A stretch of DNA of 64,000 nucleotides from Octopus sinensis (lineage: Eukaryota), in NCBI RefSeq assembly GCF_006345805.1, contig NC_043008.1, positions 62,310,001-62,374,000 of the forward strand. Direction: 5' to 3'. Shown here piece by piece: positions 10,334 through 57,112 of this stretch. A program made the position numbers and the translations under genes. Within the stretch, counting starts at the first letter, position 1; every line of letters starts with the position of its first letter. The notes under the pieces are model-generated. The model ran no database searches, was not told where the DNA came from, and worked only from the letters and a program-made list of their open reading frames with translations.

Positions 10334-10440
10334 TTTTTTAATTTTTATTTTTATTTTCCTTTTTTTATCCCCCAAAAGAAAAGCTCTACTTTGTAATTTG
10401 TCCCCTCTGTGTTCAGCCCTGTGTGGCTAATAAAGAAACA
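10334..10440 (+). mobile_element. 5'-truncated 3' end of the Tx1-clade LINE
   Basis: CAAAAGAAAAGCTCTAC...AGCCCTGTGTGGCTAATAAAGAAACA nearly matches 16484-16551; (TATC)n lies on both sides. Confidence 0.9.
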
Positions 10441-10698
10441 TATCTATCTATCTATCTATCTATCTATCTATATCTCTATCACAATGGACGGACGCTAGTC
10501 ATATCGGCTCCAAGTAAGTTGGCCACTTTTACATGTTTAAAACTCCTTGTTGTCAAATATTTTGTTTTAATCGTTGTGCAAATTCATTCACTAAAAAACC
10601 TGAGAATTATTCACGTAGAATTCCGCCCCTGTATGGGCGAAATTACAAAAAAACTTTCAAAACTTTCGTGGGTTTTTTAGCCATTTTTCATTTTGAAA

Positions 10699-12725
10699 AT
10701 GGCAACTAAAACCACGTGGCTAGCCCGCCAGTCATGCAGAACGGTAGCAAAACACTACTATTGCTACCACTAGCTGCTAAACATCGCAGCGTGAACACCG
10801 CTGTCACCACCATCACCACCACCACACAACAACACAACAAATCTAACGTCGCATTCACCATCGCCGCGACCAAAGACATTAACTTAGATTTCCCCTCACT
10901 CCCCCACCACTTGTTGATGATAAAGGGACAGAGAAGGGATTTCAAAAATGAATACAAACGAAAACATGAATGCCAGCACCACCACCATCACCACCAACAA
11001 CAACAACAACGAAATTGGCACAAAGCCGCCTACCAAAGACAACACCGCCACACCAACACCACACACTACTACGACGTCAAATGCTACATCCCAGCCTTCT
11101 GCTGCTAATACCGCCAACACCAACACCACTACCATGACTTCAATTAACACTGCCACAATTAACACTTCTACTGCCAAATTCAAAACGAATTTTGCGGACG
11201 TAACAAAACAAAAAAGAACAATTGTAACATTCACCACACAGAGATAAACCGCACAAAGGCACTCTTCTCCAAAGAAGGAGACAAATTGCACCTTCATATT
11301 CCACAACACATCGTGGAAAACACGCAAAAAAAACAATAATTTATAAAGTAATAAACAAAAAAACAAGAAGAACAGAAATGCACCGCAGGAAAAAATCGAT
11401 AAATGCCTTCGTCCTGTATGGGACTCCAAGGAATATATCAGTTGGGGAAACAAATTTGGTACAGTCCAAGTACGTTTCCTCAACGAAAGTTTAGCAAAAC
11501 GTTTTTTCCACATTGGAACTACATCGGACGACTTGGTAATGATACCAGTCTATTTAAACAAAAGGGTCACGAAAGTCCAAATAAAAAACATACCATTTGA
11601 TGTCGAAACACAATGGGTGGTCTCTGCCATCTGCTTTGAAATGTCAGAGACAATGTCAGAGACAAACATCCTGGAAATCGCGGTTCTAGGAGAGAAAGAC
11701 TATGTGGGCAATCAATCGAATTCCTGCTTCAATTGGATGAAGCAGCAAGAGAGAAGATACCCACCGCTATAGAACTGCCAGGAGGCTACAAACTCTATAT
11801 AGTGGTAGAGGGCAGGCGACCACGCTGCTATTTGTGTGGAAGCGAAACACACTTGAAAAAGACGTGCCCAACCACTGCACACCAGAGCAACAACAACAAC
11901 CACTACCACAACCAAAGCACTCCGGAAAAAAAGCTCTACTACCCACCACCACCATCAACACAGAAGACGACAAGAGAAGCACACCAAGCTAATCCGTCAT
12001 CAACCAAAAACCACTCGACACCTGGAAAATACCAACACTACCATCAACAGCAAACCCAAAGGAACAGAAAACAAAGAAAACACACACAAACTGATCCCCC
12101 ATCCCTTATACCGCACTCAACACACACAAACACTCAACAACCAACAACAACGAAAAACAACACAACCACTTACACAGACATACATAGAAGCCCACAACAT
12201 ACCCCTACCCCCTTCTGATTCCTCAGAATTTCGTCGGAAGACGAAACCAGTGAGGAATGGCAAATAGCTACAAAAAGAAGGAAAATAAAGAGCAGAAACA
12301 CAACCAAACCAAATGCAAACACGAACAAAGCAGGGGAAATACATCTCCCGAAGACATTTCAAAACCCAACGCAAACACAAGCCACACCAACACCACAAAA
12401 ACATATACAGCAACATGCTCACAGCCATAGACACCAAAAACACAAATTTGATGGAATACATCCAATCAAAAACAAACATAACAGAAGATGACATAAAAAA
12501 AACAACCACCCATACACAACACCACCAGACCACATCAAAATAATACACATCTCCAAAAGTCTGCACCACACACTCAAAGGCATTTTCCCCAGTGCGGTTG
12601 GTAATGCCAAAAATATCTCACAAAGAAACTGTACTGGGATCTTCTCGAGGACAAACCAACGGAGGAGAAAGCAAAACTTTCGAGCAGTAAGTAACCCTCT
12701 GTATTCTAATTCATTAGAACTATGA
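10699..12725 (+). pseudogene. Tx1 ORF1 (gag-like), frameshifted in this sequence
   Basis: KVTKVQIKNIPFDV and KIPTAIELPGGYKLYIVVEGRRPRCYLCGSETHLKKTCP (CX2CX4HX4C, 11826-11867). The stop TGA (12723-12725) overlaps the ORF2 ATG. Confidence 0.75.
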
Positions 12726-54435: not shown

Positions 54436-54845
54436 TTTTCTCTTTTACTTGTTTCAGTCATTTGAGTGCGGCCATGCTGGAGCACCACCTTTAGTTGAGC
54501 AAAAATCGACCCCAGGACTTATTCTTTGGAAGCCTAGTACTTATTCTATCGGTCTCTTTTGCCGAACCGCTAAGTGACGGGGACATAAACACACCAGCAT
54601 CGGTTGTCAAGCGATGTTGGGGGACAAACAAAGATACACAAGCATATACACACACATACATACACATATATATATATACATATATACGACGGGCTTCTTT
54701 CAGTTTTTGTCTACCAAATCCACTCACAAGGCTTTGGTCAGCCCAAGGCTATAGTAGAAGACACTTGCCAAAGGTGCCATGCAGTGGGACTGAACCCGGA
54801 ACCATGTGGTTGGTAAGCAAGTTGCTTACCACACAGCCACTCCTG
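54436..54845 (-). mobile_element. SINE family B
   Basis: Family homology within the window. Confidence 0.88.
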
Positions 54846-56691
54846 CTGAGTAAAGTTTAGCAGAAACCTTCTAATTTATGTTTTAGCATTAGCCTGAAAT
54901 GAAAATATTTTGATTCTCATTAGGGGAGTTTCTATACAGCCAAGTTTATTGACAGCTTACAAGTGTTTACAATTCCTTTCAGAATATACCTTGCTAAATG
55001 AAAGTTTTCAGTTTAGTGAGATTAGTTCACCATAAATGTGAAATGTTGACTATGGTTAAGAATCAGTTCAAAGACTGCAAAGTAATAGAATTGTCAAAAT
55101 AAGTTTAAATGAAAGCTATGAGATTGTAATATAAAAAAACCAGAAAACACCAAATTCTCAGGAGAAGATTGTGAATGAAAGTAACAAAAAAAAAAAATGC
55201 AATTAACAATCTCTTCTATATAAGAAAAAAAGGAACGCAGAAATTTCTTCATTGATGTCTTGGATGGAATCTTATTCAAAGAACTCTGTCTTTGCTCTAT
55301 ACAGCCTTCTGCTCACATTGATTTTGTTTTCATGAATATTTTCCAACATTATTATTTTTTTTCCCAGAGTTTTTCTGATTTTAAAAGAATTTTTTTTTTC
55401 TTTCTGTTTACATCAACTTTTGTGTCTTTCACTGAATCCACAAGGTTTTGAAAATTTGCAATATTTTCTGTATTAGTGCTTCTATCATAATCCCTACATC
55501 ATTGCTGAATTATGCAAGTATTTCTCTTAATCTTTTTATATATATTTTTAATACTTTTTATTTTTAATTTTCAGATATTACAAACAACATTTCTATATAA
55601 ATTGCTTCGTATTTAAAATAAATTTAGAATTTTTCAAGAAAACAAAATAACAAACCTCTTTCCCAGTAAACCTAAATACAATATGTCAATATTTGATCTT
55701 TAAATGGAATCTTAGATTAACATAAATGCAAAGGATATCAGAAGAAACCATCAATACTGCATACATTCCTCTGGTTCTTCTCAAGTGAATATGTTTGACA
55801 AAACTTTCAGCATTTGGAAAAAAAAGGAACAATGAAATAGCAGCAGATTTCTCCCTTCTCAGCAGCAGCAGTAAAACCACCACCACCACCACCACCAATA
55901 TCATTACCACCACCAATACCATCACACCAACACTACCAATGCAGCCACAACCACCACAGCTATCACACTACCATCACCACTGCAACAAACACCACCACCA
56001 TCACAAACACCACTGCCACAATCTCCACCACCACAACCACCACCACCACAACCACCACCACCATCCTACCTCTGACTAGTATTGATCTATAATTATTTTC
56101 CCTTATTGAACATTATTGGACAGAAACAACAAATAAAGCAAAGTGGAATAAATGCGTTTATTTTTTTAGATATTCTCATAATTGTGAAAGAATCTTGGAA
56201 AACCTTTGAAGCTGTATTTTATAGAATAAAACTGTTTTGCCATGATTTTCTAGTATCTTCACCTCATATCACAGAAGTTTTCATGACTCTAAGAGAAATG
56301 CTTCGCATTTTATTGCAATTTAAACACTTGTTATTTGTCATAGCTTGTTCAACATTTAAGAAATAAACAGATAAATGTTGAAACATTCAGAGCAGATAAA
56401 ATCTGTAATTAGGGTTGCTGTACTTATTAAGATTGGGAACCATGTGTGTCAACAGTACATTGGGTATATATTTGTCAAAAGCAATAACAGTCTCTTTGCT
56501 CATTGCTACACGATGTATGATATTACATTTCAACAGTTTAGATATGGTTTCTGGTCTATAAACTGCGAAATGTTTACCATAGTTTGGCACCATCACAGCT
56601 AAGCAACTCAATGTGCGAGACAAACATGGCAGGCATTTACTTCATAGAATTTTTAATATTTATAATATTTCATAATATTTTTAATATTTCC

Positions 56692-57112
56692 AAGGCGGCG
56701 AGCTGGTAGAAATGTTAGCATGCTGGGCAAAATGCTAAGTGGTATTTCATCTGCCGTTACGTTCTGAGTTCAAATTCCACCAAGGTCGACTTTACCTTTC
56801 ATCCTTTCAGGGTCGATAAATTAAGTACCAGTCATGCACTGGGGTTGATATAATCGACTTAATCCATTTCTCTGTCCTTGTTTGTCCTCTCTGTGTTCAG
56901 CCCCTTGTGGGTAGTAAAGAAATAGGTATTTCATCTGCTGTGACGTTCTGAGTTCAAATTCTGCCAAGCTCGGCTTTGCCTTTCATCCTTTTGGGGGTCG
57001 ATAAATTAAGTACCAGTTATGCACTGGAGTCAATATGATCGACTTAATCCATTTCTTTGTCCTTGTTTGTCTCCTCTGTGTTTAGCCCCTTGTGGACAAT
57101 AATGAAATAAGA
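56692..57112 (+). mobile_element. SINE A head+2-body dimer with 14-bp TSD
   Basis: ATTTTTAATATTTC at 56677-56690 and 57113-57126; junction GAAATAG|GTATTTC. Confidence 0.9.

What the first reader, a model, noticed from the sequence alone, without database searches (positions are those of the whole stretch)
10397..57112. SINE A shares its terminal 44 nt with the Tx1 LINE: a candidate LINE-SINE partnership
Seen: Tx1 end 10397-10440 TTTGTCCCCTCTGTGTTCAGCCCTGTGTGGCTAATAAAGAAACA aligns without gaps to SINE A ends, 38/44 with 56881-56924 and 36/44 with 37151-37194, and is co-terminal. SINE A copies have 13-17-bp TSDs and no poly(A). Established: stringent-type LINEs mobilise SINEs carrying their 3' tail; this is well known for CR1, L2 and RTE partners and less so for L1/Tx1. 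Twist: SINE A copies here are not in (TATC)n, so the driver is either a non-specific sister family or loses specificity in trans.
Basis: partly seen in the sequence, partly recalled or inferred. Interest (0 to 1): 0.85.

Follow-up and report, generated by a model that had tools for sequence, protein, structure and literature searches.

The report
Octopus SINE borrows a LINE's tail
In this octopod genome window the commonest short retroposon (SINE A) ends in the same ~45-50-base hairpin-containing tail as an L1/Tx1-type LINE, so LINEs of this group probably copy the SINE; this is a known kind of parasitism, but rare for this LINE group.

Summary
The LINE's last 44 nt match SINE A ends at 38/44 and 36/44, ungapped and co-terminal. 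The best of 20,000 shuffles reached 27/44, and the window background reaches 28/44.

The LINE (~10473-16551) is a dead copy with an APE endonuclease, RT and zf-RVT. It has a CCHC ORF1, no poly(A), and (TATC)n on both sides. Its nearest solved relatives are human L1 ORF2p and L1 endonuclease. I call it L1/Tx1-type by architecture and elimination, not by phylogeny.

The tail belongs to the LINE lineage. Relatives from Argonauta hians and from metagenome contigs end in the same motif. In Argonauta the LINE tail matches several local SINE tails at 34-35 of 36.

The tail's core is a 4-bp stem with a CTTGT loop. All four stem pairs show compensatory changes across 19 LINE and SINE tails (0/500 shuffles).

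SINE A copies have 14-17-bp TSDs in ordinary AT-rich DNA, not in (TATC)n. The direct driver is therefore more likely a non-specific sister LINE, like the Argonauta one, than this (TATC)n-resident family.

Verdict: a new member of a known kind, stringent LINE-SINE tail sharing. It is uncommon for the L1 group and relevant to the octopus SINE expansion.

The parts
10211..10321 (+). (TATC)n array on the 5' side of the truncated LINE copy
   Evidence: TRF: period 4, 28 copies
10330..10440 (+). 5'-truncated LINE copy: the last ~100-111 bp of the 3'UTR, with (TATC)n on both sides
   Evidence: BLAST to 16454-16551, 87% over 100 bp; sequence
10397..10440 (+). LINE 3' tail, copy a. Hairpin AGCC-CTGTGT-GGCT at 10415-10428, then AATAAAGAAACA
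10441..10480 (+). (TATC)10 spacer between the truncated and the full-length LINE
   Evidence: TRF
10473..16551 (+). Full-length but dead L1/Tx1-type LINE of about 6.1 kb. The 5' end is approximate. ORF2 has an in-frame stop at 13102-13104 and several frameshifts (13585-13880, about 14200-14514, about 15968)
   Evidence: three-frame translation; ORFs; tblastn with relatives
11733..12218 (+). ORF1 remnant with a single CCHC knuckle (CYLCGSETHLKKTC). The upstream part, 11353-11769, is in another frame
   Evidence: Pfam does not score the window copy. ORF1 of relative L006 hits zf-CCHC at 4e-5
12736..13584 (+). APE-type endonuclease domain of ORF2
   Evidence: Pfam Exo_endo_phos on both halves, 3.6e-5 and 5.2e-6. 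The intact EN of relative L007 is closest to L1 EN structures at 1e-12
13879..15968 (+). Reverse transcriptase plus the C-terminal zinc-binding domain (CPRCGQSDETVLHALVQC)
   Evidence: Pfam RVT_1 1.7e-13 and zf-RVT 6.7e-8; PDB best hit human L1 ORF2p 1e-15, against R2 at 1e-8
16508..16551 (+). LINE 3' tail, copy b, with the hairpin at 16526-16539
16552..16960 (+). (TATC)n on the 3' side of the LINE, interrupted by an inverted SINE head fragment at 16602-16735
   Evidence: TRF; BLAST
34103..35234 (+). SINE array inserted as one unit: A head, five 184-bp A units, then a terminal unit with a SINE B tail. The 10-12-bp TSD (AT)ATTAGAGGAC flanks the whole array
35666..35868 (+). SINE A monomer with internal deletions and a perfect 15-bp TSD, GATATCTCTGAATAT
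36556..36773 (+). SINE A monomer, with another SINE A starting 6 bp after its tail
36780..37194 (+). SINE A dimer. The tail at 37151-37194 matches the LINE tail at 36/44
50875..51284 (-). SINE A dimer with a 17-bp TSD, AGAATATATTAATCTAT
56694..57109 (+). SINE A dimer with a 14-16-bp TSD. The internal tail at 56881-56924 matches the LINE tail at 38/44; the terminal tail at 57066-57109 matches at 36/44
51482..51625 (+). SINE B, 5'-truncated. It has the same body as A up to TAATCGACT, then a different tail with hairpin GGGC-CTTGT-GCCT
57136..57345 (+). SINE D, with a related head and a tail hairpin TGGT-CGTGC-ACCA
250..384 (-). SINE C-type element with tail hairpin TGGC-CTTGT-GCCA, lying inside the 3'UTR of an old LINE fragment
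390..634 (-). Fragment of a sister LINE (C-terminus of ORF2 plus the start of the 3'UTR). Its 5' junction abuts (TTG)n(ATT)n
   Evidence: tblastn; sequence

Best explanation
This is a stringent-type LINE-SINE partnership in an octopod genome.

Shown: a lineage of L1/Tx1-type LINEs (APE endonuclease, RT, C-terminal zinc-binding domain, ORF1 with a CCHC knuckle, no poly(A)) ends in a conserved tail of about 50 nt. The tail's core is a GC-rich 4-bp stem closed by a CUUGU loop (CUGUGU in the window copies). The stem sits in a lower stem (UCUGUGU / AAUAAAGA) and is followed by AAAGAAAYA.

Inferred: the LINE's ORF2 protein recognises this tail on its own RNA to start target-primed reverse transcription.

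Shown: SINE A carries the same tail at its very end. So, with compensated stem variants, do SINE B, C and D and several Argonauta SINEs.

Inferred: SINE A is therefore copied in trans by ORF2p of a LINE of this lineage. It inserts with 14-17-bp TSDs into ordinary AT-rich DNA.

The in-window LINE family sits in (TATC)n and sister families sit in (ATT)n, while SINE A does not. The actual driver of SINE A is therefore most likely a sister LINE without microsatellite specificity. Such a LINE is seen in Argonauta, where its tail is nearly identical to the local SINE tails.

Not shown: RNA-protein recognition, and mobilisation itself.
For: - Tail identity is 35-38/44 for ten SINE A tails, against a shuffle maximum of 27 and a window background maximum of 28.
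- The tail sits at the extreme 3' end in both window LINE copies. The same holds for Argonauta L001 at 8626, Argonauta L008 at 6166, and JGI L002 at 1994.
- More distant LINEs, at 41-47% aa identity (L006, L007), carry the same GGC-CTTGT-GCC hairpin downstream of ORF2. This argues that the LINE is the source of the tail.
- Independent replicate: the Argonauta LINE tail matches four aligned Argonauta SINE tails at 34-35/36; at least four different SINE bodies carry this tail.
- Hairpin: 90.8% of cells are paired, and all 4 pairs show changes on both sides. In the shuffles, 0/500 reach the observed pairing or covariation score, and 12/500 reach 4 such pairs. Slid controls give 45% paired or less. 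The MFE fold contains the hairpin in 4 of 5 tails.
- SINE hallmarks: perfect TSDs of 15 and 17 bp, and no poly(A).
- LINE type: Pfam Exo_endo_phos, RVT_1 and zf-RVT. The best PDB hits are L1 ORF2p and L1 EN, with no R1 or TRAS endonuclease among the hits.
- The SINE A copies lie at JC 0.07-0.13 from an approximate consensus. The two LINE 3'UTR copies differ by JC 0.11 from each other. These are of similar order.
Against: - No LINE with exactly SINE A's stem (GCCC/GGGY) was found. The available LINE tails have GGCC/GGCY or AGCC/GGCT, so the true driver was not seen.
- Only one window and a handful of related loci were examined. LINEs of other clades in this genome (RTE, CR1, Dong-R4) could not be checked for a better tail match.
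- The hairpin is short. Thermodynamic z-scores are weak (-1.5 to +0.1), and I chose the 19 tails myself.
- The 'Tx1' assignment was not tested by phylogeny.
- The tRNA origin of the SINE head was not confirmed by ARAGORN or Rfam.
- The age comparison rests on only two LINE copies.
Confidence: 0.8

Rival explanations
1. The (TATC)n-resident LINE family in this window is itself the driver of SINE A. Target specificity is lost when ORF2p acts in trans on SINE RNA. This could happen if the LINE's preference for (TATC)n comes from pairing of its read-through 3' (UAUC)n with the nicked target rather than from the endonuclease.
For: - Among all LINE tails available, the window LINE's tail is the best local match to the SINE A consensus (score 59, 37/42).
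- Argonauta LINE and SINE tails end in CTAT, one unit of the (TATC) repeat. This hints that the repeat is tied to the RNA 3' end.
- One SINE A TSD begins GATATC.
Against: - None of the tailed SINE A copies is in (TATC)n.
- SINE A ends in GAAATA with no TATC unit.
- In the one documented Tx1-SINE case the SINE shares the LINE's target (Kojima 2015, PMC4494074).
- A sister LINE not in a microsatellite, with a near-identical SINE tail, exists in Argonauta.
- The stem differs at one pair: LINE G-C, SINE A C-G.
Confidence: 0.15
2. The direction is reversed, or the tail moved by recombination. The LINE acquired its last ~45 nt from an abundant SINE by template switching or gene conversion, and the similarity says nothing about recognition.
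For: SINE copies vastly outnumber LINE copies. Template switching clearly happens in this system, as shown by the head-to-tail SINE multimers within a single TSD pair.
Against: - The hairpin lies 3' of ORF2 in LINE relatives down to 41-47% aa identity, from samples that show no SINE A.
- It is co-terminal in every LINE copy seen.
- Compensatory changes keep the stem intact, which implies selection on structure in both partners.
Confidence: 0.04
3. A LINE of another clade (CR1, RTE/BovB, Dong-R4), not present in this window, carries a better match and is the real partner. On this view the L1/Tx1-type LINE merely shares an ancient motif.
For: Octopus genomes hold active RTE, CR1 and Dong-R4 families (PMC13282606). 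None of them could be examined here.
Against: - Three separate tail variants pair up between this LINE lineage and SINEs. These are window LINE with SINE A, Argonauta LINE with Argonauta SINEs at 34-35/36, and the L006/L007 type (GGC-CTTGT-GCC) with the SINE B, C and D stems.
- TSDs of 14-17 bp fit an APE-type, L1-like integration.
Confidence: 0.05
4. The match is chance or low-complexity similarity.
For: The tail is T- and A-rich at its two ends.
Against: 38/44 against a maximum of 27 in 20,000 shuffles and 28 across the whole window. The match also recurs in another genus.
Confidence: 0.005

Closest known systems
Stringent-type LINE/SINE pairs, e.g. eel UnaL2/UnaSINE1 (Kajikawa & Okada 2002, as cited in PMC4494074 and PMC3472496)
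   Same: The SINE and LINE share a co-terminal 3' tail of about 50 nt that contains a stem-loop. There is no poly(A), and TSDs are present.
   Different: UnaL2 belongs to the L2 clade and ends in short tandem repeats. Here the LINE is L1/Tx1-type. Mobilisation has been shown experimentally for UnaL2 but not here.
L1-clade LINEs with SINE partners in plants and algae: LINE1-1_ZM with maize/sorghum SINEs, and L1-1_CR with SINEX-3_CR (Ohshima 2012, PMC3472496)
   Same: An L1-group LINE with a conserved 3' stem-loop shared with SINEs. Compensatory mutations occur in the stem, and loop nucleotides are conserved.
   Different: Those pairs are in green plants and algae, and the Chlamydomonas pair ends in poly(A). 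Here the host is an animal (an octopod), there is no poly(A), and the LINE sits in a microsatellite. [quoted passage not shown]
Tx1-Mar LINEs and SINEU in crocodilians (Kojima 2015, PMC4494074)
   Same: A Tx1-type, target-specific LINE proposed as the driver of a SINE.
   Different: There the partnership is inferred from a shared insertion target (Mariner-N4_AMi). Here it is inferred from a shared tail, and the SINE does not share the LINE's target.
Microsatellite-specific Tx1 families: Kibi (TC)n, Koshi (TTC)n, and crocodilian (TTCC)n/(TTTC)n families (Kojima & Fujiwara 2004, via PMC4494074)
   Same: An APE-type LINE with microsatellite on both flanks, and tandem or adjacent copies.
   Different: The repeat units differ, (TATC)n and (ATT)n, and the host is a mollusc. 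No SINE partners are mentioned for Kibi or Koshi in the passages I read.
Octopus SINEs OK/OR1/OR2 (Ohshima & Okada 1994) and the 'tRNA-Deu / tRNA-Core / unclassified' SINEs of octopus genome annotations (PMC8967140, PMC13282606)
   Same: An abundant short retroposon of octopods. SINE A is very probably one of these. From memory its body resembles a Deu-type domain, but this was not tested.
   Different: None of the papers I could read names a LINE partner or describes a shared tail for them.

Membership tests
LINE-SINE partnership by shared 3' tail (stringent type) | Co-terminal 3' sequence similarity between SINE and LINE beyond chance | tested here: met
   35-38/44 ungapped, against a shuffle maximum of 27 and a window background maximum of 28. 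TSDs fix the SINE end.
LINE-SINE partnership by shared 3' tail (stringent type) | The tail is an integral, conserved part of the LINE lineage, not an adjacent SINE | tested here: met
   Present at the 3' end of two window copies and of Argonauta L001 and L008 and JGI L002; in ENA L006 and L007 the hairpin lies downstream of ORF2, element end not fixed.
LINE-SINE partnership by shared 3' tail (stringent type) | Conserved stem-loop in the tail, with compensatory changes | tested here: met
   A 4-bp stem with 90.8% of cells paired, 4/4 pairs changed on both sides, and 0/500 shuffles reaching the pairing or covariation score. The stem is short and I selected the sequences.
LINE-SINE partnership by shared 3' tail (stringent type) | SINE and LINE share integration hallmarks (TSD length, target motif) | tested here: inconclusive
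   SINE TSDs are 10-17 bp in AT-rich DNA. The window LINE is in (TATC)n, where TSDs cannot be read. The Argonauta LINE flanks are AT-rich, but its 5' end was not mapped.
LINE-SINE partnership by shared 3' tail (stringent type) | Trans-mobilisation of the SINE by the LINE's ORF2p, dependent on the tail | not testable with these tools
   Needs a retrotransposition assay.
Tx1 clade (L1 group) of non-LTR retrotransposons | N-terminal APE endonuclease, then RT, then a C-terminal Cys/His zinc-binding domain in ORF2 | tested here: met
   Pfam Exo_endo_phos, RVT_1 and zf-RVT.
Tx1 clade (L1 group) of non-LTR retrotransposons | The RT domain groups with Tx1 references in a phylogeny (RTclass1/Repbase) | not tested
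   No reference Tx1, L1, R1 or CR1 sequences were available. Indirect evidence only: the best PDB hits are L1 ORF2p (1e-15, against R2 at 1e-8) and L1 EN (1e-12, with no R1Bm or TRAS1 EN hit). Of the LINE groups listed for O. vulgaris (RTE, Dong-R4, CR1, L1-Tx1, Hero, R2), only L1-Tx1 fits this architecture.
Tx1 clade (L1 group) of non-LTR retrotransposons | Type I ORF1 (RRM plus CCHC knuckle), as described for Tx1-like elements (PMC5203782) | tested here: inconclusive
   One CCHC knuckle is visible and scores in relative L006. Pfam detected no RRM.
Tx1 clade (L1 group) of non-LTR retrotransposons | Sequence-specific insertion. This is frequent in the clade but not defining. | tested here: inconclusive
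   (TATC)n lies on both sides of both window copies. (ATT)n lies at a 5' junction and at 3' junctions. Only a few junctions were seen, and a 3' microsatellite tail belonging to the element itself is not excluded.
tRNA-derived SINE | Short, non-coding, repeated, flanked by TSDs | tested here: met
   A unit of about 231 bp, about 20 units or fragments in 64 kb, and TSDs of 14-17 bp.
tRNA-derived SINE | Head recognisably derived from a tRNA, with A and B boxes | tested here: inconclusive
   ARAGORN finds no tRNA-like gene in the window, and Rfam gives no tRNA hit at E<=1 on a SINE copy. By eye, a B-box-like GAGTTCAAATTCC is present at positions 73-85.

The most novel reading that the evidence does not exclude
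The great octopod SINE expansion was driven by a stringent-type L1/Tx1-group LINE lineage. Published annotations put SINEs at about 12% of the O. vulgaris genome, but SINE A's own share is unknown.

On this reading the LINE's RT reads a small CUUGU-loop hairpin. Flips of single stem base pairs (G-C to C-G) partition LINE families and their SINE clients into separate recognition pairs. The LINEs themselves retreat into microsatellite 'safe havens' while their SINE clients spread genome-wide.

This would be the first animal example of tail-specific SINE mobilisation in the L1 group. It would also be a natural system in which target choice in cis and in trans come apart.
Probability: 0.3. Interest if true: 0.65.

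Novelty: new member of a known kind. Interest (0 to 1): 0.5.

Why it matters
SINEs are among the most abundant transposable elements in Octopus genomes: 11.6% of O. vulgaris, against 12.9% for LINEs (PMC13282606). They have been linked to cephalopod genome evolution. Yet the papers I could read name no LINE partner, and most families are annotated as 'unclassified'.

A shared tail identifies the likely driver lineage. It also gives a concrete, mutable RNA element (a 4-bp stem plus a CUUGU loop) to test.

L1-group LINEs are usually thought to use relaxed, poly(A)-based recognition. [quoted passage not shown] An animal L1/Tx1-type stringent pair would therefore widen that picture.

The contrast between microsatellite-resident LINEs and dispersed SINEs bears on how target specificity is encoded, by the endonuclease or by pairing of the RNA 3' end with the target.

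Tried and rejected
- Two scans of metagenome contigs for LINE relatives, one with a single protein and one with alignment A1, found nothing.
- Exact-pattern scans for the SINE A tail in genome contigs and viral contigs found nothing.
- The short contigs L003 and L004 break off before or inside the tail. L005 is degenerate there. None gave a usable LINE end.
- ARAGORN and Rfam did not recognise the SINE head as a tRNA. The two weak Rfam hits (CDKN2B-AS, ARRPOF; E 0.3-0.5) are chance.
- Pfam did not score the window ORF1.
- The window holds no second autonomous LINE of another clade whose tail could be compared.
- I considered and rejected the idea that the 111-bp element at 10330-10440 is a separate short element. 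It is simply the last ~100 bp of the LINE 3'UTR, a 5'-truncated copy.
- I considered whether R1-clade elements, which can also be microsatellite-specific, fit better. No R1Bm or TRAS1 endonuclease hit appeared, while L1 EN hits did.
- The SINE A 'consensus' used was assembled by eye from the alignment, with CpG sites restored. It is approximate.

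
Full report
**What the window is.** The window is AT-rich eukaryotic DNA, full of microsatellites and short retroposons. The LINE's ORF2 has its closest protein relatives in unnamed JGI and ENA fragments (62-79% identity) and in Argonauta hians (63%). The window therefore comes from an octopod genome.

**Checking the observation.**
It matches 56881-56924 at 38/44 and 37151-37194 at 36/44, without gaps.
- A second LINE copy carries the same tail at 16508-16551 (40/44).
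- Ten of the twelve SINE A tails in the window score 35-38/44. The other two carry an indel.
- Across every 44-mer of the window on both strands, nothing outside these tails exceeds 28/44.
- In 20,000 shuffles of the tail against a SINE A copy, the mean was 19.7, the sd 1.3 and the maximum 27.
- With a 3-nt indel the similarity extends to about 50 nt.
- The match is co-terminal. TSDs begin directly after SINE A's ...AAAGAAATA, and the LINE's ...AAAGAAACA abuts (TATC)n.

**The LINE.**
- A ~6.1-kb element runs from about 10473 to 16551 on the plus strand.
- It has an ORF1 remnant with one CCHC knuckle. Pfam detects Exo_endo_phos, RVT_1 and zf-RVT in ORF2.
- The copy is dead. It has an in-frame stop at 13102 and frameshifts near 13585-13880, 14200-14514 and 15968.
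- A 5'-truncated copy of its last ~100 bp lies just upstream at 10330-10440.
- Both copies have (TATC)n on both sides. The arrays are at 10211-10321, 10441-10480, 16552-16602 and 16735-16960, with another at 9275-9634.
- A fragment of a sister LINE on the minus strand (634-390) has its 5' junction in (TTG)n(ATT)n.
- The nearest solved structures are human L1 ORF2p (1e-15, against R2 at 1e-8) and L1 endonuclease (1e-12). No R1Bm or TRAS1 endonuclease hit appeared.
- The LINE groups reported in O. vulgaris are RTE, Dong-R4, CR1, L1-Tx1, Hero and R2 (PMC13282606). Only L1-Tx1 fits this architecture.
- I therefore call the element L1/Tx1-type. I could not run an RT phylogeny against reference clades, so the narrower label 'Tx1' is inferred, not tested.

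**The tail belongs to the LINE lineage.**
- In Argonauta hians locus L001, the LINE 3'UTR ends ...TTCTGTGTCGGCCCTTGTGGCTAATAAAGAAATCTAT. It is followed by ordinary AT-rich DNA, not a microsatellite.
- A second Argonauta family (L008) and a JGI contig (L002) end ...GCCCTTGTGGC(T/C)AATAAAAGAAAT(A/C) followed by (ATT)n.
- Two more distant LINEs, at 41-47% aa identity (L006, L007), lie in head-to-tail arrays. They carry CGGC-CTTGT-GCCA several hundred bases after ORF2; in L007 it lies close to where the next copy begins.
- The hairpin motif is thus older than any of the SINE families seen here. This argues for a LINE-to-SINE direction of transfer.

**Independent replicate.** In Argonauta, at least four SINE-like families with different bodies end in the LINE's tail, at 34-35 of 36 positions. 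Some of them share the SINE A body at 71-77% identity. The same partnership therefore exists in a second octopod lineage.

**The hairpin.** I aligned nineteen LINE and SINE tails (alignment A2) and scored a 4-bp stem around the CTTGT loop.
- 90.8% of cells are paired, and all four pairs show changes on both sides.
- 0/500 shuffles reach the observed pairing or covariation score, and 12/500 reach four pairs changed on both sides. All slid registers give 45% pairing or less.
- The two window LINE rows are mis-registered by their 6-nt loop (CTGTGT). They account for the two 'unpaired' cells at pair 13-23.
- Examples of compensated stems: LINE GGCC/GGCT, SINE A GCCC/GGGY, SINE B GGGC/GCCT, SINE C TGGC/GCCA, SINE D TGGT/ACCA.
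- MFE folds contain the hairpin in four of five tails. In the LINEs they extend it with UCUGUGU / AAUAAAGA. The z-scores are weak, as expected for so short a stem.
- Caveat: I chose the tails by position and motif, so the sample is not blind.

**The SINE.**
- SINE A is a ~231-bp unit.
- TSDs are 15 bp (35666-35868), 17 bp (51284-50875, minus strand) and 14-16 bp (56694-57109). All lie in ordinary AT-rich DNA, and there is no poly(A).
- No tailed copy lies in (TATC)n.
- ARAGORN and Rfam do not recognise a tRNA in the head. A B-box-like GAGTTCAAATTCC is visible by eye.
- The SINE A copies lie at JC 0.07-0.13 from an approximate consensus. The two LINE 3'UTR copies differ by JC 0.11 from each other. 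This is compatible with similar ages, but the evidence is weak.

**Mechanism.** I infer the standard stringent model. ORF2p of a LINE of this lineage binds the tail hairpin and primes reverse transcription at the nicked target. SINE RNAs carrying the tail are copied in trans.

SINE A does not share the (TATC)n location of the window LINE, and its stem differs from the LINE's at one pair. The direct driver is therefore more likely a dispersed sister family, as in Argonauta L001, than this family. The rival reading, in which this family acts in trans with relaxed target choice, gets about 0.15.

It is notable that Argonauta tails end in CTAT, one unit of the (TATC) repeat. This suggests that pairing of the RNA 3' end with the target contributes to the microsatellite association.

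**Comparison with what is known.**
- Tail sharing between stringent LINEs and SINEs is textbook for the L2, CR1 and RTE clades.
- In the L1 group it is rare. A 2012 survey found three SINEs with L1 tails among 58 pairs; the examples it describes are from maize/sorghum and a green alga (PMC3472496).
- Tx1-Mar has been proposed as the driver of SINEU in crocodilians, on the basis of a shared target (PMC4494074).
- Microsatellite-specific Tx1 families are known, such as Kibi and Koshi (same paper).
- The octopus repeat papers I could read report abundant SINEs and active L1-Tx1 families but name no partner.

**Verdict.** This is a new member of a known kind. It is of moderate interest, because it concerns the L1 group in an animal and the dominant octopus SINEs.

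Noticed in passing
window 34103-35234; also 36780-37194, 50875-51284 (minus strand), 56694-57109: SINE A occurs as head-to-tail multimers. Each has one head (positions 1-47) followed by 184-bp units, always joined GAAATA|GGTATTT.

TSDs flank the whole dimer or array, so the multimer existed at or before insertion. The 5.6-unit array ends in a unit with a SINE B tail.

In the three dimers, internal tails read ...AGTAAAG/AGCATAG and terminal tails read ...AATAAAG/AATAATG, which suggests a structured dimeric master rather than random template switching.
   Followed up: partly
window 16602-16735 (minus strand): A SINE head fragment (positions 1-134, with no tail) lies inverted inside the (TATC)n array, directly 3' of the LINE. 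Repeat units flank it on both sides. A 3'-truncated SINE is not what target-primed reverse transcription produces, and this is unexplained.
   Followed up: no
window 250-634 (minus strand): An old fragment of a sister LINE has its 5' junction in (TTG)n(ATT)n. Its 3'UTR runs into a SINE C-type element whose tail hairpin is TGGC-CTTGT-GCCA. This could be a nested insertion or a chimera.
   Followed up: partly
L006 (period 7547 bp), L007 (period about 6150 bp), L001 8250-8652: LINE relatives sit in head-to-tail tandem arrays, or have a second 5'-truncated 3'UTR copy just downstream. This is the same arrangement as the truncated-plus-full pair in the window, and suggests insertion next to earlier copies.
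   Followed up: partly
window 34103-37194 and 56694-57400: SINE insertions cluster. There are four independent insertions within 3.1 kb and three within 0.7 kb, several of them starting a few bases after the tail of the previous one.
   Followed up: no
L001 8652, 11313; L008 199, 356 and others: Argonauta LINE and SINE tails end ...GAAATCTAT. The terminal CTAT is one unit of the (TATC)n repeat in which the window LINE sits. In the (ATT)n families the tail ...GAAAT(A/C) runs straight into ATT repeats.
   Followed up: partly
protein P0004: A 466-aa protein with 62% identity to this LINE's ORF2 is filed in NCBI under a Herbaspirillum sp. metagenome-assembled genome, on a 1.8-kb contig. Most likely this is animal DNA contaminating a bacterial bin.
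   Followed up: no
window 43483-44358, 38142-38658, 1310-3143, 25346-25861, 29051-29512: The longest 'ORFs' outside the LINE are translations of simple repeats (His/Ile/Met runs, poly-Ser/Leu/Arg/Glu, TATA/CACA-type microsatellites). No host gene was recognised in the window.
   Followed up: no
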